Source: Octopus bimaculoides (Eukaryota). From it: DNA of 38,665 nt. The stretch is taken from the NCBI RefSeq assembly GCF_001194135.2, contig NC_068986.1, positions 2,318,644 through 2,357,308 on the forward strand. Reading direction: 5' to 3'. This document shows positions 20 through 38,665 of the stretch, in pieces (positions within the stretch are counted from its first letter, which is position 1; the number at the start of each line of letters is the position of its first letter). The notes under the pieces are model-generated. The model had not been told where the DNA came from and made no database searches. It was given only the letters and a program-made list of their open reading frames with translations. The translations under genes and the position numbers were made by a program.

Positions 20-590
20 GGAATAAGATTGTATTCTGGCTTGGAGTGATATATATTGCGGTTGGATATTAATGATATTATATTAGTATTGATTACATTG
101 AAAGTAGCAATTAGATATATGATGGCTGGGAATTCGATATATTTTGGATGAGAATCAAATGTTGTGGGTGAAGAGGCTTATTGAAATTGGAAATGAGATA
201 TATATTGGCTGTTAACTACAGATTTTGTGACTTAGAGATTATATTCTGGTTAAAAGTGAGATATATTGGGACTGGGAGTGAAATATACCGTAACTAAAAT
301 GAAATATATTGTGGCATAGAGAAGCTTAAAGTTTGGCTGTGGATTAGATATGTTGTGGCTACATACTGTGGCTGGGAATTAAATATACTGTGACTGGATG
401 TGAGATATTCTACGACTCGGAATTGGATGTATAGTGGCGGTAATTAAATATATTGTAACTGGGAATTAGATATTGTAGCTGAGAATGTGATATATTGAGG
501 CTGGGAATAAGATATATTTTGGCTGGGAATTGTATTTACTGTGGTTTAGAGTAAGAAATAATTTGGTTGGGAATCAGACATGTTGTAACT
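20..590. repeat. Degenerate ~22-bp minisatellite (consensus approx. GGCTGGGAATTAGATATATTGT)
   Basis: Recurrent variants such as ggctgggaattcgatatatttt, ggctgggaattaaatatactgt, actgggaattagatattgt and ggctgggaataagatatatttt at roughly 20-23 bp spacing. Confidence 0.75.
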
Positions 591-960: not shown

Positions 961-1383
961 TCTGTTTGTCTCGCTTTTCAGTAATAGATTAAAGTGGAGC
1001 AAATATTTTATACATAAGAGTGAATTCATCTACACCAAACAGTTAAGAAGATAATATTAAGCATGATTCAAATCGAAATTTATGAAAGAACAACTAAGAG
1101 CGTAAAATAAATTATAGATTTATTCGGATTCCACCGATACGGATTTCCTTGCTCTTTTATCACTTATTTTAACTTCAAGTACTTGTTTACACGTTCAACA
1201 AGAAATTTCAAGTAGTTACATTCTGTTGTAATGATTTGTAAATTAAAGTTATTATTCGCTTCAGAAAAACAGAAATACTAATTTAATGTTCAGTCTTCTG
1301 CCATTTTTTACTTATTTCTTTCTCTTCTTAGTTCTCTTCCCTGTTTTAGTGTGTTGTCTCAATTATTATTATCTGATGATTAA

Positions 1384-1595
1384 AGACGGTAGCGTGTAGA
1401 AGCATTAGCATGCGGGGCGAAATGCTTAGCGGTATTTCGATTGTCTTTACGTCCTAAGTTCAAATTCCGCCGAGGTTGACTTTACCTTTTATCTTTTAGA
1501 GGTCGATAAAATAAGTAACGGTTGCACACTGGAGTTGATGCAATCGATTCAACTCTTTCCCCTGAAATTGCTAGCCAAATGCTAAAATCTGGAGA
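1384..1595 (+). mobile_element. tRNA-type SINE, family A (diverged copy)
   Basis: Matches the in-window family consensus ggcggtgagctggcagaa...gaaatgcttagc...gttcaaattccgccgaggtcgactttgcctttcatcctttcggggtcgataaa...gtcgatgtaatcgact; B-box-like GTTCAAATTCC present. Confidence 0.85.
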
Positions 1596-4311: not shown

Positions 4312-4590
4312 TTCAGTAGTTTTAGTTTTATAACGTGCTTTCACTTCACTACCGAGCGCAGCTCTGTGTGCCTTGGGTATGTGCTGTGGTTTGCTGTGAT
4401 GCTCTTATGGTTATTGTATTGAAAGTGTTTTGCGTAGGATGTGTGCAGTGCCTAGTAGTACAATTTTCCATATTTTATATATATTTGTAAGTCCTGGTGT
4501 TTTTGTTATGTATTTGTCTGAATATTTTTTTATTATACCTAAGGCACCTACTATGATAGGAATTGTTTCTGTTTTTAGATTCCACATTCT
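4312..4590 (-). mobile_element. 5'-truncated R4/Dong-like (RLE) retrotransposon, C-terminus plus 3' UTR
   Basis: MWNLKTETIPIIVGALGIIKK...KIVLLGTAHILRKTLSIQ* then a UTR running into (TAA)n; near-identical to 24050-24267; (TAA)n on both sides. Confidence 0.85.
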
Positions 4591-4665
4591 TATTATTATT
4601 ATTATTCTTATTATTATTATCATTACCATTATTATTATCATTATTATTATTATTATTACTACTAA

Positions 4666-4840
4666 GGCGGCCAGCTGGCCGAATCGTTAGCAGGCCGGGC
4701 GAAATGCTTAGCAATATTTCGTCCGTCGTTACGTTCTGAGTTCAAATTCCGCCGAGGTCGACTTTGCTTTTCCATCCTTTCGGGGTTGATAAATTAAGTA
4801 CCAGTTGCGTACTGGGATCGATCTAATCGACTGGCACCCT
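4666..4840 (+). mobile_element. tRNA-type SINE, family A (well-preserved copy)
   Basis: ggcggccagctggccgaatcgttagc...gttctgagttcaaattccgccgaggtcgac...gatcgatctaatcgact; begins directly after (ATT)n. Confidence 0.9.
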
Positions 4841-5228
4841 CATGTCAACTTTTTTTTGTTGTTTTTTTAAGTGAATTAAAGGATTCCGATTCTTATTTTC
4901 TGCAAGATGTGTAGGCCACAGCTAAATATATAACAATTGAAGATGGAATAATTACTAAAAATATTCCCAGGAAACTTGAATGCGTAGGAATCTGTTTTAG
5001 TTACTTTATGAATCATATTAACCTAGAAATCAACTCAGTACATGGCAAAGAGACAAGTCAAAGTCATAAAAACTGACACTGAACCTCATGGTAATGAGTG
5101 ATGTAATTAATTCATATTTAATTGTTGATGCAGAAACGATTATCAAGTCTTAATAGCACTGCGTGATAAATACATTTCATGTATCCAATCTTAAAGCTAT
5201 TTCAAATTCGAACGATAGTCACAGAGAT

Positions 5229-6779: not shown

Positions 6780-6920
6780 NNNNNNNNNNNNNNNNNNNNN
6801 NNNNNNNNNNNNNNNNNNNNNNNNNNNNNNNNNNNNNNNNNNNNNNNNNNNNNNNNNNNNNNNNNNNNNNNNNNNNNNNNNNNNNNNNNNNNNNNNNNNN
6901 NNNNNNNNNNNNNNNNNNNN
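6780..6920. other. Assembly gap (N run)
   Basis: N run followed by (AC)n. Confidence 1.
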
Positions 6921-6984: not shown

Positions 6985-7210
6985 ATGTATGTATGTCTGT
7001 GTTTGTATTCTGCCATCGCTTGACAATCAGTGTTGATTTGTTTACTCTCCCACACATTAAGCTGTTCGGCAAGAAAGGCGATGGAATATATTTCAGATTT
7101 AAAAAAAAACATTAAGTAAGAAGTACTCTGGTCGACTTTTTTTTGACTAAACTCTATAAGGCAGTACTCCAGCACAACCGCAGTTCAATAACCGAAGCAA
7201 TGAAAAGGTA
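6985..7210 (+). mobile_element. 3' half of the family C/D SINE (diverged)
   Basis: gtctgtgtttgt...catcgcttgacaa...gtttact...gttcggcaa...gactaaa...ctccagcacaaccgcagttcaataaccgaagcaa matches 38035-38189. Confidence 0.7.
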
Positions 7211-7217
7211 ACATGTG

Positions 7218-7218
7218 T

Positions 7219-7262
<44 letters not shown>

Positions 7263-10044: not shown

Positions 10045-10690
10045 CATCATCTTCATTTTTTTTCTCCGTTTATTTTAGAGAAACATTGTCATCTGTTGGT
10101 ATTGATACATCGATTAGAAAGCATTTTTTTCTTGGTGATCTCTGACAACTATATCCGGCCTATTGGCCTTAATTTCTCTATGTGTGTGTATTGGCGTATC
10201 CCTGAGTATGGTTGCTTTCTCATTTCCTGTGACCTTTTCTGGCGTGTGTCTATACCATCTTTTCTCTGTTGTTATTCCATAGTGTTGGCATAGCTTCCAG
10301 TATATATAGGTCCCAACTCTGGCGTGTCTGTGAATATATTCCTTTTTATCCAGGACTGGGCAACCAAAGACAATATCATTCATTGTTTCTTTTCCACCAC
10401 CACATACTCTGCAGTTACTTGTATTTCTTTGCATTACATGTTTTTGGTTATTTATGGTGGGAAGGCTTTGATTTTGTGCTGCAATTAAAAATCCTTCAGT
10501 CTCTGCTTTGAGTCCTGAGCTTCTCAACCATTGCTGGGATTTTGTTTTGTCTATTTCTTTTCTGTTTAGTTTAACCCGGAATTTGCCATGAAGGGGCTTT
10601 TCTTGCCATCGATTTATGATGATCCGTTGCTGTTCTAGTTTTAGTTTGGATTTCAGTTGTTTTACATCTTTCGTTCTTTCTTCTTCTTAT
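10045..10690 (-). mobile_element. R4/Dong-like fragment: post-RT region, CCHC knuckle and start of the restriction-like endonuclease
   Basis: WQEKPLHGKF...QWLRSSGLKAETEGFLIAAQNQSL...CRVC...ETMNDIVFGCPVL..KEYIHRH...WYRHTPEKV..NEKATILRD.PI.T.REIKANRPDIVV. Confidence 0.9.
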
Positions 10691-12084: not shown

Positions 12085-12440
12085 AAAATCGCTACAGCTT
12101 CGGATAAAATACTTTGGTGTTTCTTGTGGCTCTTTACGTACAGACTTCAAATCCCGCCAATGTTAGTTTTTCCTTTCATCCTTTTAGAGTAGATAGGATA
12201 AAGTACCGATCAAGTACTGGAGTGGATATATAATTTTCTGTCCCCACCTATGGCTTCGAAATGCCTAGCTGAGTTGCTTTGTAATAAATCATTTATGGTT
12301 TGAGATTCCGGACTGTAGGCAAAATGTCCTCTAGCATTTAATCACATCTCTTTGCATTCAAACCCCGCCAAGGCTGATTTTTACTTATATTTTTATGAAG
12401 GTTGATAAAATACATTCTGTCACGTACTGGGGGTGATACC
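12085..12440 (+). mobile_element. Two highly diverged family A SINEs in tandem
   Basis: ttcaaatcccgccaatgttag..cctttcatccttttagag..gataaagtacc and ttcaaaccccgccaaggctga..gttgataaaat..gtactggggg. Confidence 0.6.
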
Positions 12441-12990: not shown

Positions 12991-14413
12991 TTCATGCAAC
13001 TAGACAGACACCTAAAACAATTAGCGAAAGTATGGTACACGCTACCAAGCCATACTCGCTTTTGGATGACAGCAATGTTTTTACTATATTTATCTATTGT
13101 AAACTTCTCAGTTGGAACTGCTAAAGTCAATCTACAAACTGGATTTCAAACTCATTCAACTTTCAGAGAAAGTAAACTTAAAACTATAGAAATATAATAA
13201 TTAAATAACTAAATACATAAAAAAGTAAAAGATGACTCGTTAAATTTAGTGGAACTATTGATACCATCGATTTTTAATCATTCTATTTTGCTTTATTTCT
13301 TTCCTTCTTTCAGGATTATTTTCTTCTGAATTACTACTCATTTCGTTCTTGTTGTTGTTTTTAGCGCTTAAAGTCTGCTTCCAAACTATAATCCTATACT
13401 TCTATATCGAGTCAGTAGAAATATATCAGTTGAACAAGAGAATATTTACTTGTCAAACTGCGCCTGTTGTCGTAAGAAGTTTTCTAAGAATTCGAAAGGA
13501 ATTCGAAGCATGCTGTTTGATTCAAGACAAAATACAGAAAAGACGACGTGTTCAGAAAGGAAGGAAGAAGAGAAAAAAGAAAACAAAGAAGCGGGCGTTG
13601 CAGGCTTTTTTTTTAAATATAGGATGCTCAATACAATGAGATAAATACATCACCCCATCAACACCGTTTGATCAATAAACACGACATGGTGTCTTTTCTG
13701 AAACCAAAGAATTTTCCTCGTGTTTTTCGTCATCTCTCGAACTTTCAAAATACAAATACAAATTTTAAAAGCGGTGACTGACTTTATCTGTAGATAGTGA
13801 AGTGGTTTCGTTTAATGAATATGATATCAGAAAGGAGGAGAAAATGCTACTACTGAAATAGAAAGAATAATGGTACTTTTGATTTCTTGCGGAACCTTAC
13901 GTTGTAATGAGAATGATTTCCAACATAATTTATTTTACAATGGAATTTAAAATAAGAAATTTGCTTTTGTAAGTGTTATATTAGTCACATTACCATTGTT
14001 CAATCATAACTGGAGACGGTGGAATGGTTAAAACGGTTGTGTCGAATTGAAAGGTGTTATTCCCCCCTCTCCTGCACTATATGTTGAGTTCAGGAACTGC
14101 TGGGGTGGATGCCAGTTTACTCGTCGCCTCTTCCAGGCTATACAAATTGTCATCATTATTGCAAGTTTAATTTTCTCTAGGACTTAAAATTTCGCTTGGC
14201 GGTTTATGAAACCAATGAAGAATTAACATTTCTTCACTGGCTGAAAAAGCCAACGGATGAAATTTAAAGATTCTGTCAAAAATTAATTTTATCATAAATT
14301 TGACTCTACTCTCAGCATTGAATCGCCCAATCTGTAAATGTTCAATTATTGTTCTTAAATTTGCTTTAAAATAATAACTGTTAATAAACATTTAATATCA
14401 TTAATATTATTAA

Positions 14414-14606
14414 GTCTGCGAGCTAGCAGAAATGCTTAGATATATTTCGTCTGTCTTTACGTTCTGAGTTCAAATTCCGCCGAGTTCGATTTTGCTTTTC
14501 ATCCTTTCGGGGTCGATAAATTATGTACCAGTTGCATAGTGGGTCGGTTTAATCGACTGGCCTCCTCCCCAAAAATTTCAGGCCCTGTGCCTAGAGCAGA
14601 AAAGAA
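14414..14606 (+). mobile_element. Family A SINE with a deletion in the head
   Basis: Core gttctgagttcaaattccgccgag...gtcgataaatta and tail cctccccaaaaatttcaggccctgtgcctagagcagaaaag. Confidence 0.85.
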
Positions 14607-14615
14607 TATTATTAA

Positions 14616-14826
14616 GGCGGTGAGCTGGCAGAACTGTTAGCACGTCAGGCAAAATGCTTAGTGGTATTTCGTCCATCTTTATGTTCTGAGTTCAGATTCC
14701 GATGAGGTCGTCCTTGCCTTTCGTCATTTCGGGTTCGATAAAATATTACTAGTTGGATACTGGGGTCGATGTAATCGACTTCACATCTCCTTCGAAATTG
14801 CTGGCTTTCTTCCAAAATTCGAAAGC
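14616..14826 (+). mobile_element. Family A SINE directly behind the previous copy's tail
   Basis: ggcggtgagctggcagaactgttagcacgtcaggcaaaatgcttagtgg...gtcgatgtaatcgact. Confidence 0.9.
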
Positions 14827-16540: not shown

Positions 16541-16820
16541 CCGGCTTCTATACAGTTTCCGCTAACCAAACCCATTCAGAGGTCATTGGTTAATTTCTTT
16601 GATGCTACTAAGGTGAAGAACTACCGGAAGTTGGATCCAGTCCGGAACTCCGTAGTCACTGGTTGAACGTCTTAATCACACAGACATTACCTATAGAATA
16701 AACTTACCTAAACTATTATAGCTCTATACCATATTCTTTTTGCCTGAGCACAAACGTGTTTTTGGTTCTCAACGAGACTAGTAAATAGGAAATGTGACGG
16801 TATTATAGTGACATAAAAAA

Positions 16821-16999
16821 GGCGGCTTAACGTTATTTCGTCTGTCTTTATGTTCTGAGTTCAAATTACGCCGAGGTCGACTTTGCCTTTCATCCTTTCG
16901 GGGTCGATAAATTAAGAACCAGTAGCGTACTGGGGTCGATCTAATCGACTGGTCTCTCCCCCAAAATTTCGAGCCTCGTGCTTAGATTAGAAAAGAATA
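16821..16999 (+). mobile_element. Family A SINE with a deletion in the head
   Basis: ggcggc...atttcgtctgtctttatgttctgagttcaaattacgccgaggtcgac...ccccaaaatttcgagcctcgtgcttagattagaaaag. Confidence 0.9.
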
Positions 17000-23519: not shown

Positions 23520-24267
23520 AAAATTGACAAAGTAAAATCCCAACGATAGTTGAAAATCTCAAGACTCAAAACAGAGACTGAAGAATTTTTAATTGCAGCA
23601 AGAAAGTTTAAAGCCTTCCCACCAGAAATCATCAAAAGCACATAATGAAAACCAAAATACAACTGCAGAATATGAGGTGATGGGGAAGAAACAGTAAATC
23701 ATACTGTCTGTGGCTGCCCAGTCCTGGCTTAGAAGGATTATATTTACAGATATGACAAAGTTGGGACCTATATACACTGGAAGCTATCCCAACACCATGG
23801 AATGACAACAGAGAAAGGATAGTATAAGCACACCCCAGAAAAGATCTCATAAAATGACAAAGCAACCATACTCTGAGATATACCAATACACGCTGATAGA
23901 GAAATTAAGGCTAATAAGCCGGATATAGTTATCAGAGATCAAGAAAAAATGCCTTCTAATTGATGTATCACTACCAATAGACGACAATGTATCTCTAAAG
24001 AAACGGAGAAACTCTCAAAATACAAGGATCTGGAAATAGAGGTAACTCGAATGTGGAGCCTAAGAACAGAAACAATCCCAATAATAATCGGTGCATTAGG
24101 TGTAATTAAAAAACATACAGACAAAAACATAACCAAAACACCAGAACTTATAAATGTATATAACATACAGATAATCGCGTTACTAGGCACGGCACATATC
24201 CTATGTAAAGCACTTTCAATACAGTGAAAATAAGAGCATCACAACAAACTACAGCACATACCCAAGA
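23520..24267 (+). mobile_element. R4/Dong-like fragment with deletions (post-RT region, RLE domain, C-terminus, partial 3' UTR)
   Basis: LKTETEEFLIAA, YIHWKL, WYKHTP, DIPIHADREIKANKPDIVI, KYKDLEIEVTRMWSLRTETIPIIIGALG, LLGTAHIL; preceded by (GAT)n(GAG)n. Confidence 0.85.
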
Positions 24268-24327
24268 TACAACGGGAATTAGTACAACCGGAATTAGTAC
24301 AACCGGAATTAGTACAACCGCAATTGA
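24268..24327. repeat. 15-bp tandem repeat TACAACCGGAATTAG, about 4 copies
   Basis: Units start at 24268, 24283, 24298 and 24313; the two middle units are identical. Confidence 0.9.
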
Positions 24328-24910: not shown

Positions 24911-24952
24911 TAGGTATGTATATACGTATAGATCTACATATATATATATATA

Positions 24953-25211
24953 NNNNNNNNNNNNNNNNNNNNNNNNNNNNNNNNNNNNNNNNNNNNNNNN
25001 NNNNNNNNNNNNNNNNNNNNNNNNNNNNNNNNNNNNNNNNNNNNNNNNNNNNNNNNNNNNNNNNNNNNNNNNNNNNNNNNNNNNNNNNNNNNNNNNNNNN
25101 NNNNNNNNNNNNNNNNNNNNNNNNNNNNNNNNNNNNNNNNNNNNNNNNNNNNNNNNNNNNNNNNNNNNNNNNNNNNNNNNNNNNNNNNNNNNNNNNNNNN
25201 NNNNNNNNNNN
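24953..25211. other. Assembly gap between (TA)n and (AAT)n
   Basis: N run. Confidence 1.
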
Positions 25212-25283
<72 letters not shown>

Positions 25284-25390
25284 AAGAAGAAGAAGAAGAA
25301 GAAGAAGAAGAAGAAGAAGAAGAAGAAGAAGAAGAAAAAGAAGAAGAAGAAGAAGAAGAAGAAGAAGAAGAAGAAGAAGAAGAAGAAGAA
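25212..25390. repeat. (AAT)n-(GAA)n microsatellite
   Basis: Seen directly in the sequence. Confidence 0.95.
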
Positions 25391-26790: not shown

Positions 26791-27376
26791 TTAAGATGAT
26801 TGAAAAGTATTATATTATCTTCTACGAATCATATTCAATGTTCTAAAGTATAACGTTTAAAAAATCCAAAATAAATCCCGTAACATCTAATTCATTTTTT
26901 GTTGTTTCTAAATTCAATTATGTGGTTTTATTTCATCCAGCTACCGTGCTTCATAAAAATCAGTCCAGTATAGCAATTATAGGTGTAACTATGAGGACTC
27001 CCCTCTCTCCTCGCCTCCGTTTTCGGGGTGGGGGGAAGAGGCGTTGGCTAGTAAGTCGGGTTGAAAACAAACGAAAAAACGTAGAAAAGAATAAAAATTT
27101 CCGAAGCTGGGAAAATCTGAGGGTCCTCCACACACACTTCACCCCTCACCCCAAACCTGTTTTCGGAATAAAGTCCGTTGCAAGTATGTCGGAAGTCAGA
27201 TTAGTTGAAAACACACGGAAAATGTTAATTATTACCAATTTTATTTAGCGTTATTAACGACCAACATACAAACAATATTCCTTTTTATAGGTATTATATA
27301 TTGCTGCTGCTGCTGCTGTTGCTGCTGTTGTTGTCGTCTCTGCTGCTGTTGCTTTTACAGTTGTTGTTATTATTAA

Positions 27377-27610
27377 GGGGGTTAGCTGGCAGAAGCGTTA
27401 ACACGCCGGACGAAATGCTTAGCGATATTTCGTCTGTCTTTACGTTCTGGGTTCAAATTCCGCTCAGGTCGACTTTGCCTTTCATCCTTTCGGGGTTCAT
27501 AAATTAAGTAACAGTTACGCACTGGGGTCGATGTAATCGACTTAAATCCCTTTTTCTGTCCTTGTTTGTCCCCTCTGTGTTTAGCCCCTTGTGGGCAATA
27601 AAGAAATAAG
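27377..27610 (+). mobile_element. Family A SINE with an alternative 3' tail ending ...ccccttgtgggcaataaagaaat
   Basis: Head and core as in other copies; the tail differs from the cccc..aaaatttcaggcct..agaaaag tail. Confidence 0.85.
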
Positions 27611-27649: not shown

Positions 27650-27845
27650 GGTGGTTAGCTGGCAGAAATAGTAACACACCAGACAAAATGCTTAGCAGCA
27701 TTCCGAGTTCAAATTCCACCCAGGTCAACTTTGCCTTTCATCCTTTCGGGGTCGATGAAACAAACACCAATTGAGCAATGGAGTCGATGTAATCGACCGG
27801 CCCCCTCCCCTACAAAATTTCAGGCCTTGTACTTACAGCAGAAAG
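27650..27845 (+). mobile_element. Family A SINE with the standard tail, followed by (AGT)n
   Basis: gtggttagctggcagaa...gttcaaattccacccaggtcaac...ccctacaaaatttcaggccttgtacttacagcagaaag. Confidence 0.85.
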
Positions 27846-35678: not shown

Positions 35679-36106
35679 NNNNNNNNNNNNNNNNNNNNNN
35701 NNNNNNNNNNNNNNNNNNNNNNNNNNNNNNNNNNNNNNNNNNNNNNNNNNNNNNNNNNNNNNNNNNNNNNNNNNNNNNNNNNNNNNNNNNNNNNNNNNNN
35801 NNNNNNNNNNNNNNNNNNNNNNNNNNNNNNNNNNNNNNNNNNNNNNNNNNNNNNNNNNNNNNNNNNNNNNNNNNNNNNNNNNNNNNNNNNNNNNNNNNNN
35901 NNNNNNNNNNNNNNNNNNNNNNNNNNNNNNNNNNNNNNNNNNNNNNNNNNNNNNNNNNNNNNNNNNNNNNNNNNNNNNNNNNNNNNNNNNNNNNNNNNNN
36001 NNNNNNNNNNNNNNNNNNNNNNNNNNNNNNNNNNNNNNNNNNNNNNNNNNNNNNNNNNNNNNNNNNNNNNNNNNNNNNNNNNNNNNNNNNNNNNNNNNNN
36101 NNNNNN
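35679..36106. other. Assembly gap
   Basis: N run. Confidence 1.
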
Positions 36107-36319
36107 TATATATATATATATATTTCGGTTCGAATGGATTTTTATACGGCGCCGAGTTTACAACCATGTAAATAATAATGCATTTTTATATAAGCTTAAA
36201 GCTTATGGCAATCACCGTGCAATGACTAAGGAAAATAGTCTAATAAAGGGACATCTAAACCCTCGACGGAGAAAAGAAGACTTTCGTATCTCCGGTTCTA
36301 TAATTCTATTTTTATTTTT

Positions 36320-36507: not shown

Positions 36508-37538
36508 ATCTATTCGATTTGACGGACAGATTTAACTTTTTATTTTTTTAACTAAACTCTTTGAAATTTTGGATACTGGTAGAATGTGTCACATAGAACG
36601 GGGTTTACTCGTAACGTTTTTGACATAAATTTGTATTTTAAAAGTTATTTCGTGTTAAAGTTGTCGTATTTGGGTAATTTTAACCAATCAATGACGTGTA
36701 TTTAGCTGAAGAAAATTACTGCTGCTGTTTGCGAACAACAACTTCCGGGTCCGTTGACAAAATGATGAGCATTCGACAACAGAAAATTTTAAACTGAAAA
36801 TCTCCCCTAACAAAACCATTTTGATACATATATGTGTAAAAAAATCACATCACGCAATCAAACCAATGAAAGAGCCTCTACCTGGTCGCTCGACACACTA
36901 CAAATAGCAGCCAAAGTATCCCCCTACTTAAATCACACGCCCATTGTATATAATGTATTATAGAGAGGGAGAGAGATAAACAGAAAAGAGATAGTATTGA
37001 TAGAAGAGTGCGCATCGTAGTTATTAAGACAAAACTTACTCGGAAAAGGATGCGTGGCGTTCGATCATATAATAATATAAATAATATATAAATATACATA
37101 TATGTACATACATATATGTACATACCTACATACATATGTATATATACATGCATATATGGGTATAGGACATCCCTCTCTTGTTCTTCATCCTTTTTGTTTT
37201 TCTCTCCCACACTTTCCCTATTCTTCTCCTCTCCCCTTCACCGTTCCCTCTCTCTCTCTCACTCTTCCTCCTTGACTCTCTCGTCACTGACAAGTCACGA
37301 AAGGGGATCTCTCTTTCTGTCCACTTCCTAAAGAAAAGACGTGCTTTTTCCTATCTCCTATCATGGCTCGTCTACCTACCGTTCATAATGATTTTTCTAT
37401 CGTCTTGGCTCAACAGCCCTCACCATTTGTTTTTACTGTCTTGCTCTCACTGTCCTGTTCTTGTTAACACTTTCACCCTCCGCAAAAAATCCCAAATTTT
37501 ATTTTATTTACTTTGCGGGTAGGACTGTTTCAACGAAG

Positions 37539-37602
37539 TCGCGTATTGTCCTTACCTTCGAAACGCGGAGTAGATGAAACAGGGACAACTGAAGAAGGGG
37601 TA
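37539..37602 (+). ncRNA. Candidate non-circularly permuted hammerhead ribozyme
   Basis: All core nucleotides present (CUGAAGA 37589-95, GAAA 37560-63, GUA 37543-45). Stem III: CGCGT/ACGCG. Stem I: TTGTCC/GGACAA, extendable. Stem II: TACCTT/GGGGTA with G-U pairs. Confidence 0.6.
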
Positions 37603-37634
37603 TATTCTTTATGTTGCATGTCTCGTTTCTCTGT

Positions 37635-38034
37635 NNNNNNNNNNNNNNNNNNNNNNNNNNNNNNNNNNNNNNNNNNNNNNNNNNNNNNNNNNNNNNNNNN
37701 NNNNNNNNNNNNNNNNNNNNNNNNNNNNNNNNNNNNNNNNNNNNNNNNNNNNNNNNNNNNNNNNNNNNNNNNNNNNNNNNNNNNNNNNNNNNNNNNNNNN
37801 NNNNNNNNNNNNNNNNNNNNNNNNNNNNNNNNNNNNNNNNNNNNNNNNNNNNNNNNNNNNNNNNNNNNNNNNNNNNNNNNNNNNNNNNNNNNNNNNNNNN
37901 NNNNNNNNNNNNNNNNNNNNNNNNNNNNNNNNNNNNNNNNNNNNNNNNNNNNNNNNNNNNNNNNNNNNNNNNNNNNNNNNNNNNNNNNNNNNNNNNNNNN
38001 NNNNNNNNNNNNNNNNNNNNNNNNNNNNNNNNNN
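37635..38034. other. Assembly gap
   Basis: N run. Confidence 1.
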
Positions 38035-38218: not shown

Positions 38219-38280
<62 letters not shown>

Positions 38281-38297
38281 CGATAGATAGATAGATC

Positions 38298-38371
<74 letters not shown>

Positions 38372-38620: not shown

Positions 38621-38665
<45 letters not shown>
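38520..38665. repeat. (TCA/TCG)n degenerate and (CT)n microsatellites
   Basis: Seen directly in the sequence. Confidence 0.85.

What the first reader, a model, noticed from the sequence alone, without database searches (positions are those of the whole stretch)
37539..37602. Candidate hammerhead ribozyme with a non-circularly permuted strand order
Seen: all conserved core bases and three helices within 64 nt. Strand Z is CGCGU-A(37545)-UUGUCC. Strand Y is UACCUUC-GAAA-CGCG. Strand X is GGACAA-CUGAAGA-AGGGGUA. Stem III pairs 37540-44 with 37563-67 (5 Watson-Crick pairs plus a G.U). Stem I pairs 37546-51 with 37583-88 (6 pairs, extendable to 8). Stem II pairs 37553-58 with 37597-602 (two G.U, with A.C at its base). 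Established: hammerhead types I-III are circular permutations with order X-Y-Z. Here the order is Z-Y-X, which no circular permutation produces, and the standard type II fold fails because no stem I forms after the internal GTA at 37570. Inference: the Z-to-Y link joins the distal ends of stems I and II, which lie side by side in the active fold, and a ~14-16-nt linker spans stem III to stem I. A pseudoknotted monomer or a multimer is therefore plausible. I recall reports of natural non-circular hammerhead permutations from other animals but cannot check whether this element is known. It may belong to a Penelope-like repeat; downstream context is lost in the gap at 37635.
Basis: partly seen in the sequence, partly recalled or inferred. 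Interest (0 to 1): 0.85.

Follow-up and report, generated by a model that had tools for sequence, protein, structure and literature searches.

The report
Probable chance hammerhead-like motif, type-SGC order
The 64 bases do contain every piece of a hammerhead ribozyme in the rearranged "type-SGC" order first published in 2023, but this is a single unconserved copy with a weak second helix and no clamp helix, so it is most likely a chance motif rather than a working ribozyme.

Summary
37539-37602 (+) holds CUGAAGA, GAAA, a GUA cleavage site and three complementary strand pairs in the order Z-Y-X.

That order is already described. It is the "type-SGC" non-circular hammerhead permutation of Eckert et al. 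2023 (PMC10085705), known from 583 metatranscriptome and metagenome sequences and validated in vitro.

Stems I and III are solid (-6.3 and -6.8 kcal/mol). Stem II is weak. It has an A.C mismatch at 10.1/11.1 followed by two G.U pairs (-4.3 kcal/mol). The alternative register has one inserted nucleotide and a G-C base, as the published family does, but only 4 bp at 0.0 kcal/mol.

The fourth helix that clamps stems I and II is absent. Disrupting that helix abolished cleavage of SGC-3.

The native flanks fold into a competing nested structure (-40.4 kcal/mol, z -3.1) that sequesters almost every hammerhead strand.

I found no second copy in the window, no Rfam hit, no match to a covariance model of the published family, and no relative in the viral, metagenome or prokaryote collections. 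There is no Penelope-like or retrozyme context.

Chance expectation at this quality is about 1.5e-4 per window but about 4 per Gb in any block order.

Best reading: chance match (about 0.8). A real ribozyme is about 0.06. One in vitro cleavage assay plus a search of the source genome would settle it.

The parts
37539..37545 (+). Block S, first half: stem III 3' strand (U37539, C G C G, U37544 = U16.1) and A37545 = H17. The predicted cleavage site lies between 37545 and 37546.
   Evidence: It pairs with 37563-37568 (5 Watson-Crick pairs plus 1 G.U), -6.8 kcal/mol.
37546..37551 (+). Block S, second half: stem I 3' strand UUGUCC.
   Evidence: six Watson-Crick pairs with GGACAA 37583-37588; -6.3 kcal/mol.
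37552..37555 (+). S-to-G linker joining the distal ends of stems I and II.
   Evidence: Measured the same way, published type-SGC members give -2 to 2 nt, so linker length does not discriminate.
37553..37563 (+). Block G: stem II 3' strand UACCUUC (C37559 = 11.1) followed by GAAA (G12 to A15.1, 37560-37563).
37563..37568 (+). Stem III 5' strand ACGCGG.
37569..37582 (+). G-to-C linker (14 nt). Its 3' part, 37575-37582 (UGAAACAG), is the 3' strand of helix P0 and sits where the published family has the 5' strand of its fourth helix.
37583..37602 (+). Block C: stem I 5' strand GGACAA, core CUGAAGA (37589-95), and stem II 5' strand AGGGGUA. A37596 is either a 10.1 mismatch or an inserted nucleotide ahead of G37597 = G10.1.
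37525..37532 (+). Helix P0 5' strand CUGUUUCA. It forms 8 Watson-Crick pairs with 37575-37582. Together with stem III this gives an imperfect hairpin over 37525-37582.
   Evidence: -19.7 kcal/mol, 62% of the ensemble, z -2.0; duplex -9.4 kcal/mol, p about 0.01 against shuffled flanks.
37503..37517 (+). Upstream strand of a competing 15-bp helix that pairs with 37564-37578. It removes the stem III 5' strand and P0.
   Evidence: 140-nt MFE -40.4 kcal/mol, z -3.1, 1 of 200 shuffles as good.
37605..37616 (+). Downstream strand that pairs with the stem I 5' strand and the CUGAAGA core (37586-37596) in the competing fold.
37635..38034 (.). Assembly gap (400 N) hiding the downstream context.

Best explanation
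The element is a fortuitous juxtaposition, in non-coding repeat-rich animal-like DNA. It combines a small imperfect inverted repeat (37525-44 / 37563-82, which supplies 'stem III') with two short core words (GAAA, CUGAAGA). It also has a 3' segment whose two arms happen to complement the hairpin's apical loop. It satisfies the minimal pattern of a type-SGC hammerhead. Most likely it is not a selected self-cleaving ribozyme, and in its native context the RNA, if made at all, would fold into competing nested hairpins rather than the triple-crossing hammerhead fold. Shown: the motif exists, how rare it is by chance, which family features are missing, and that competing folds exist. Inferred: that it does not function.
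For: 1. Genome-scale chance. The rate is 6.9e-6 hits per CUGANGA site at this quality. That is about 4 per Gb in any order and about 0.3-0.6 per Gb in S-G-C order. Eckert et al. themselves expected false positives from such patterns and kept only candidates with covariation.

2. Stem II is marginal. The insertion register is 4 bp at 0.0 kcal/mol. Validated SGC-1 and SGC-3 have -7.1 and -4.8 kcal/mol. G10.1, C11.1 and the inserted U are invariant in the 16 published sequences.

3. There is no helix clamping stems I and II next to block C. The best here is 1-2 contiguous pairs, against 4-7 in all 12 published sequences recovered by the same script. Disrupting that helix abolished cleavage of SGC-3.

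4. Competing nested folds. The 37495-37634 MFE is -40.4 kcal/mol (z -3.1). It pairs away the stem I 3' strand, the stem II 3' strand, the stem III 5' strand, the stem I 5' strand and CUGAAGA. The three hammerhead helices sum to only -17.4 kcal/mol before loop penalties. Natural flanks already slow validated SGC ribozymes.

5. Single copy and no relatives. None in the window, none in viral contigs, metagenome contigs or genome contigs.

6. No family match. No Rfam hit at E<=10. A covariance model of the HRIMA-1 family, run with filters off, does not report the site at E<=10.

7. No ribozyme-bearing element around it.
Against: - For this single window the motif is improbable: 1.5e-4 for any order and about 1e-5 to 2.5e-5 for S-G-C.
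- All 13 invariant core nucleotides are present.
- In the alternative register the site reproduces the family's peculiar one-nucleotide insertion after CUGAnGA, with G10.1-C11.1.
- An 8-bp helix (P0, p about 0.01) abuts the stem I 5' strand exactly where the family's fourth helix starts.
- A lone pattern match of another permutation (GCS-1) did cleave in vitro.
- The source genome and its relatives could not be searched, so the absence of homologues is weak evidence.
Confidence: 0.8

Rival explanations
1. It is a functional type-SGC (non-circularly permuted) hammerhead ribozyme encoded in an animal genome. The hairpin 37525-37582 (P0 plus stem III) presents the stem I and stem II 3' strands in its apical loop. 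Block C (37583-37602) folds back onto that loop to build the core and cuts after A37545. P0 takes the spatial place of the family's fourth helix.
For: - Correct block order, complete core and strong stems I and III.
- The insertion register mirrors the published family: inserted nucleotide, G10.1-C11.1, 4-bp stem II and a 2-nt linker.
- P0 abuts stem I with 0-nt spacing, as helix 4 does in SGC-1 and SGC-3, with p about 0.01.
- Window-level chance is 1e-5 to 1.5e-4.
Against: - Stem II is 0 to -4.3 kcal/mol with a mismatch or G.U-rich pairs.
- Nothing clamps stem II to stem I apart from the short linker.
- A much more stable competing fold exists.
- No homologues and no covariation were found.
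- The covariance-model and Rfam searches were negative.
- There is no mobile-element or circular-RNA context.
- A RefSeq-wide search by the discoverers reported no animal example.
Confidence: 0.06
2. It is a decayed relic of a once-active permuted hammerhead, for example from an extinct retroelement or an integrated viroid-like RNA. On this view the stem II mismatch and G.U pairs, and the loss of the clamp helix, are post-inactivation mutations.
For: Core, stem I and stem III are intact while stem II shows transition-type defects: A.C, G.U, G.U. The window is full of decayed repeats.
Against: There is no other copy and no recognisable element around it. Nothing shows that stem II was ever better. 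The hypothesis is not distinguishable from chance with the data at hand.
Confidence: 0.05
3. The real feature is the structured or inverted-repeat region itself (37495-37634). It could be a hairpin-forming repeat fragment or a small structured RNA unrelated to catalysis, with the hammerhead words being incidental.
For: The + strand MFE is -40.4 kcal/mol, z -3.1, with 1 of 200 shuffles as good. The hairpin 37525-37582 has z -2.0. P0 has p about 0.01. All four non-Watson-Crick positions of the 15-bp helix are G.U on the + strand.
Against: The - strand also folds well (z -2.3), as expected of a plain DNA inverted repeat in A/T-rich sequence. There is no Rfam family, no second copy and no conservation data.
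Confidence: 0.07

Closest known systems
Type-SGC hammerhead ribozymes (HRIMA-1 motif and type-SGC variants; Eckert, Friedrich, Weinberg & Weinberg, NAR 2023, PMC10085705)
   Same: - Identical block order S-G-C.
- CUGAnGA, GAAA and U-H core.
- Stems I (5-6 bp) and III (5-7 bp).
- A short linker tying the distal ends of stems I and II.
- A possible single-nucleotide insertion between A9 and G10.1, followed by G10.1-C11.1.
- The same triple-crossing pseudoknot topology.
   Different: - No helix flanking block C that joins stems I and II. That helix is present in all family members examined and required in SGC-3.
- Stem II is 4 bp with two G.U pairs (0.0 kcal/mol), or 6 bp behind an A.C mismatch, instead of 5 strong pairs.
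- The inserted base is A, not U.
- The stem I sequence is unrelated to the conserved AUGUU/AACAU.
- A covariance model of the family does not detect it.
- The setting is animal-like chromosomal DNA, not metatranscriptome contigs carrying hairpin ribozymes.
- It is a single sequence without covariation.
GCS-1, the lone type-GCS pattern match in Caballeronia peredens (same paper)
   Same: It is a single sequence that fits a permuted-hammerhead descriptor, with no covariation and no meaningful genetic context. It is a precedent showing that such a match can still cleave slowly in vitro (0.014 per min).
   Different: The block order differs (G-C-S), it is bacterial, and it was tested experimentally. 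The authors themselves regard its biological relevance as unclear.
Classical type I/II/III hammerheads (Rfam hammerhead families), including Penelope-like-element minimal hammerheads that act as dimers
   Same: The same catalytic core words and the same three-helix logic.
   Different: - The order is not a circular permutation of C-G-S.
- No Rfam hammerhead model scores it even at E<=10.
- The type II reading fails at stem I.
- There is no PLE ORF, no tandem copy and no short palindromic stem III loop of the PLE kind.

Membership tests
Hammerhead ribozyme (any topology) | Conserved core: C3 U4 G5 A6 N7 G8 A9; G12 A13 A14 A15.1; U16.1 paired to A15.1; H17 not G | tested here: met
   CUGAAGA at 37589-95, GAAA at 37560-63, A37563-U37544, A37545.
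Hammerhead ribozyme (any topology) | G10.1-C11.1 pair closing a stable stem II | tested here: inconclusive
The pair is G37597-C37559 only if A37596 is an insertion, and the helix is then 4 bp at 0.0 kcal/mol. G10.1 and C11.1 are invariant in the 16 published SGC sequences.
Hammerhead ribozyme (any topology) | Stems I and III flanking the cleavage site | tested here: met
   Stem I has 6 Watson-Crick pairs (-6.3 kcal/mol). Stem III has 5 Watson-Crick pairs plus a G.U (-6.8 kcal/mol).
Hammerhead ribozyme (any topology) | Site-specific self-cleavage giving 2',3'-cyclic phosphate and 5'-OH ends | not testable with these tools
   This needs an in vitro transcription and cleavage assay.
Hammerhead ribozyme (any topology) | Conservation with compensatory changes in the helices | tested here: inconclusive
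   - No homologue in the window.
- None in viral contigs or genome contigs.
- The exact 23-mer is absent from metagenome contigs.
- A degenerate pattern gave at least 120 metagenome matches, and none has both stems I and II.
- The source genome and related animal genomes are not in any searchable collection.
Rfam hammerhead families (types I, II, III and variants) | Score against the curated covariance models | tested here: not met
   No hit at gathering score in the window, and none at E<=10 in 37300-37634. This is expected for a non-circular permutation.
Type-SGC hammerhead (Eckert et al. 2023) | Block order S (site) - G (GAAA) - C (CUGAnGA), with uninterrupted blocks | tested here: met
   S is 37539-51, G is 37553-68 and C is 37583-602. 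The descriptor scan labels the site SGC.
Type-SGC hammerhead (Eckert et al. 2023) | Short linker (typically about 3 nt) between the stem I and stem II strands | tested here: met
Published members measured with the same greedy script give -2 to 2 nt.
Type-SGC hammerhead (Eckert et al. 2023) | Fourth helix flanking block C that joins stems I and II (required for SGC-3 cleavage) | tested here: not met
   The best adjacent pairing is 1-2 contiguous pairs, against 4-7 in 12 of 12 recovered family members. The best distal duplex with the 3' tail is -10.0 kcal/mol, p = 0.14. The 32 nt after block C are known, so the gap does not hide an adjacent strand.
Type-SGC hammerhead (Eckert et al. 2023) | Sequence and structure similarity to the HRIMA-1 motif | tested here: not met
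   Model R1 was built from 16 published sequences with stem III and helix 4. Run over the whole window with filters off at E<=10, it gave 13 weak hits, none at 37539-37602.
Type-SGC hammerhead (Eckert et al. 2023) | Context: contigs of viroid-like or circular-RNA agents, often with hairpin ribozymes | tested here: not met
   The window is repeat-rich DNA with scaffold gaps, interspersed repeats and microsatellites. Rfam finds no other ribozyme.
Penelope-like-element hammerheads / retrozymes | Type I minimal hammerhead in tandem or LTR-like repeats, next to an RT/GIY-YIG ORF or in a ~170-400-nt tandem unit | tested here: not met
   There is no canonical hammerhead, no repeat of the segment and no ORF of 110 aa or more with a domain near it. 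The only domain match is a weak zf-RVT hit 27 kb away.

The most novel reading that the evidence does not exclude
This is a working type-SGC hammerhead in an animal chromosome, the first non-circularly permuted ribozyme outside environmental viroid-like RNAs. It would be a variant in which the clamp helix is replaced by helix P0 (37525-32/37575-82), which pairs the 5' leader with the G-to-C linker. The ribozyme would then be one long hairpin whose 3' tail invades its own apical loop.
Probability: 0.05. Interest if true: 0.7.

Novelty: not a real feature. Interest (0 to 1): 0.2.

Why it matters
If it were active, it would extend non-circular RNA permutations from environmental viroid-like RNAs to an animal genome. 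It would also show that the fourth helix of type-SGC ribozymes is dispensable or replaceable, which bears on how easily hammerheads arise de novo.

As it stands, the value of the case is cautionary. A complete hammerhead word set with two good helices turns up by chance a few times per gigabase once all six block orders are allowed. Single-copy pattern matches therefore need covariation or a cleavage assay before they are called ribozymes.

Tried and rejected
- Rfam 15 at gathering score on the whole window and at E<=10 around the site: nothing relevant.
- Type II reading through the internal GUA at 37570-72: stem I fails (G37573/A37588 and onward).
- Second copies in the window: a 28-mer with up to 3 mismatches, and blastn with word size 7, both found none.
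- Penelope-like or retroelement context: ORF lists and Pfam gave only a weak zf-RVT fragment at 10117-10527.
- Exact 23-mer and block C 20-mer in viral contigs, the 23-mer in metagenome contigs, and the 23-mer in genome contigs: all 0.
- Degenerate pattern keeping stem III and the cores but freeing stems I and II: 0 viral matches.
- Route to orthologous loci through the neighbouring 114-aa ORF: no exact record and no homologue.
- Covariance model of the published HRIMA-1 family: it does not detect the site.
- A clamp helix with the 3' tail: not better than shuffles.
- I first thought the 1-nt S-G linker was sterically disqualifying. I dropped that argument when validated family members gave equally short linkers under the same measurement.
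- I first counted helix P0 as evidence against the hammerhead fold. I now treat it as neutral, because in SGC-1 the fourth helix is likewise joined directly to the end of stem III.
- Literature searches for permuted hammerheads in animals or cephalopods found none.

Full report
**What is in the sequence.** The stretch 37539-37602 on the + strand reads UCGCGUAUUGUCCUUACCUUCGAAACGCGGAGUAGAUGAAACAGGGACAACUGAAGAAGGGGUA.
- Stem III is A37563-U37544, three further G-C/C-G pairs, G37567-C37540, and a G37568.U37539 wobble.
- Stem I is six Watson-Crick pairs between 37546-51 and 37583-88.
- Stem II runs from an A37596.C37559 mismatch through G.U, G.U, G-C, G-C, U-A and A-U.
- The core words are CUGAAGA (37589-95), GAAA (37560-63) and U37544-A37545.
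- The internal GUA at 37570-72 cannot start a type II hammerhead, because G37573, A37574 and U37575 face A37588, A37587 and C37586.
- The assembly gap begins at 37635 and runs to 38034.

**The order is already known.** Eckert, Friedrich, Weinberg and Weinberg (NAR 2023, PMC10085705) divide the hammerhead into three blocks. Block C is the stem I strand, CUGAnGA and the stem II strand. Block G is the stem II strand, GAAA and the stem III strand. Block S is the stem III strand, the cleavage site and the stem I strand.

The classical types I-III are CGS, GSC and SCG. The authors discovered and validated the non-circular order S-G-C ("type SGC") in 583 sequences from metatranscriptomes and metagenomes. 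They also reported two CSG sequences and one doubtful GCS sequence.

No paper in the library reports one in an animal or a cephalopod.

**How the candidate compares with the validated family.** I rebuilt SGC-1 and SGC-3 from the oligonucleotides in the paper's Supplementary Table 1. I also took 16 HRIMA-1 sequences from its Supplementary Figure 6.

In all 16, CUGAnGA is followed by an inserted U and then G10.1, and C11.1 precedes GAAA. Stem II is five mostly G-C pairs (-7.1 and -4.8 kcal/mol in SGC-1 and SGC-3). A fourth helix of 4-7 pairs flanks block C directly (-6.5 and -5.6 kcal/mol). Disrupting any of the four helices abolished cleavage of SGC-3, and compensatory changes restored it.

The candidate has two stem II registers.
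- In the alternative, A37596 is treated as the inserted nucleotide. This gives G37597-C37559, G.U, G.U and G37600-C37556. It reproduces the family's layout, but the helix is worth 0.0 kcal/mol.

Next to block C no clamp helix exists. The best is 1-2 contiguous pairs. The best duplex between the G-to-C linker and the 3' tail (-10.0 kcal/mol) is no better than shuffles (p = 0.14).

A covariance model built from the 16 published sequences was run over the whole window with filters off. It does not report the site at E<=10. Rfam reports nothing either.

Linker length does not discriminate. Published members measured greedily give -2 to 2 nt.

**Chance.** I wrote a descriptor that allows all six block orders, a span of at most 100 nt and at most one stem II mismatch. 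It finds only this site in the window.
- In 160 Mb of first-order Markov sequence it found 9 lax hits, or 4e-3 per window.
- In 1e7 simulated contexts with a planted CUGANGA, the candidate's quality (stem I >= 6, stem II >= 6 of 7, stem III >= 6) occurred at 6.9e-6 per site.
- With the window's 21 CUGANGA sites, that is 1.5e-4 per window for any order and roughly 1e-5 to 2.5e-5 for S-G-C alone.
- The insertion register was ten times rarer.

Extrapolated, this is about 4 chance hits per Gb in any order and about 0.3-0.6 per Gb in S-G-C order. The motif is unlikely in any one window. One instance somewhere in a multi-gigabase animal genome is expected. The discoverers of the class explicitly discarded such single matches as probable false positives unless covariation supported them.

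**Competing structure.**
- In isolation, 37522-37585 folds into a hairpin of stem III plus an 8-bp helix P0 (37525-32 with 37575-82). It is -19.7 kcal/mol, 62% of the ensemble, z -2.0.
- P0 is mildly unusual: p about 0.01 against shuffled flanks, and a perfect 8-mer complement appears in 0.6% of shuffles.
- P0 abuts the stem I strand where the family's fourth helix begins. I therefore treat it as neutral or weakly favourable rather than contrary.
- With the native flanks (37495-37634) the minimum-energy fold is -40.4 kcal/mol (z -3.1, 1 of 200 shuffles).
- That fold pairs away the stem I 3' strand, most of the stem II 3' strand, the stem III 5' strand, the stem I 5' strand and the whole CUGAAGA box.
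- The three hammerhead helices sum to -17.4 kcal/mol before any loop or pseudoknot penalty.
- Even validated type-SGC ribozymes are slow (0.007-0.19 per min at 25 mM Mg2+), and natural flanks slow them further.

**Relatives and context.**
- The segment is single-copy in the window.
- The exact core strings are absent from the viral, metagenome and prokaryote-genome collections.
- A degenerate pattern that fixes stem III and the core words but frees stems I and II gave no viral match.
- The same pattern gave at least 120 metagenome matches. None has both stems I and II, so they are background.
- The neighbouring 114-aa ORF has no record and no homologue, which closed the only route to orthologous loci.
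- The window is non-coding and repeat-rich: interspersed repeat copies, microsatellites and four N gaps.
- It has no tRNA and no ORF of 110 aa or more with a Pfam domain, except a weak zf-RVT fragment 27 kb away.
- There is nothing Penelope-like or retrozyme-like.
- I could not verify that the DNA is from a cephalopod.

**Verdict.** The sequence facts are right and the topology is that of a known, validated class. The instance nonetheless fails two properties that matter in that class: a stable G-C-based stem II and the clamp helix. It is embedded in flanks that favour other folds. It has no detectable relatives or supporting context. It is no rarer than chance allows at genome scale.
- Chance: 0.8.
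- Functional ribozyme: 0.06.
- Decayed relic: 0.05.
- An unrelated structured or inverted-repeat element: 0.07.

The lone GCS-1 match cleaved in vitro, so weak in vitro activity cannot be excluded. I would guess 10-20%. That alone would not show a biological role. One transcription-cleavage assay and a search of the source genome and its relatives would settle the question.

Noticed in passing
window 37495-37634 (+): The region folds unusually well as RNA (-40.4 kcal/mol, z -3.1). It includes a 15-bp helix, 37503-17 with 37564-78, whose four non-Watson-Crick positions are all G.U on the + strand. The - strand is also stable (z -2.3), so a plain imperfect inverted repeat is the simplest reading.
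   Followed up: partly
window 1368-1561, 1665-1782, 4650-4844, 12131-12195, 14378-14571, 14600-14793, 16769-16962, 27361-27554, 27693-27810: About nine copies (60-85% identity) of an interspersed repeat of roughly 180 nt containing GTTCTGAGTTCAAATTCCGCCGAGGTCGAC..CCTTTCGGGGTCGATA. It looks SINE-like, and several copies sit as adjacent pairs about 221-256 nt apart (families D12, D13, D15 and D19).
   Followed up: no
window 10117-10527 (-) and 10128-10416 / 23661-23949: An ORF fragment with a weak zf-RVT match (E 4e-4, below Pfam's cut-off) lies in a 289-nt segment that recurs inverted at 84% identity 13 kb away. These are probably decayed non-LTR retrotransposon copies. A second inverted pair is 4367-4589 / 24049-24271 (83%).
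   Followed up: no
window 6780-6920, 24953-25211, 35679-36106, 37635-38034: The window has four assembly gaps (runs of N). The top 'inverted repeats' I1-I4 (24922-25211 with 35846-36135) are largely N matched to N, so they are artefacts.
   Followed up: yes
window 87-574: A degenerate tandem array with a period of about 22 nt (..AATTAGATATATTGTGGCTGGGAAT..). Eleven 47-nt copies are in register (family D20), so it is a small satellite-like block at the window's start.
   Followed up: no
window 38220-38370, 7204-7260, 25212-25390, 37200-37300, 38627-38665: Long microsatellites are present: (GATA)n, (AAT)n running into (AAG)n, a CT-rich tract just upstream of the candidate, and (CT)n at the window end.
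   Followed up: no
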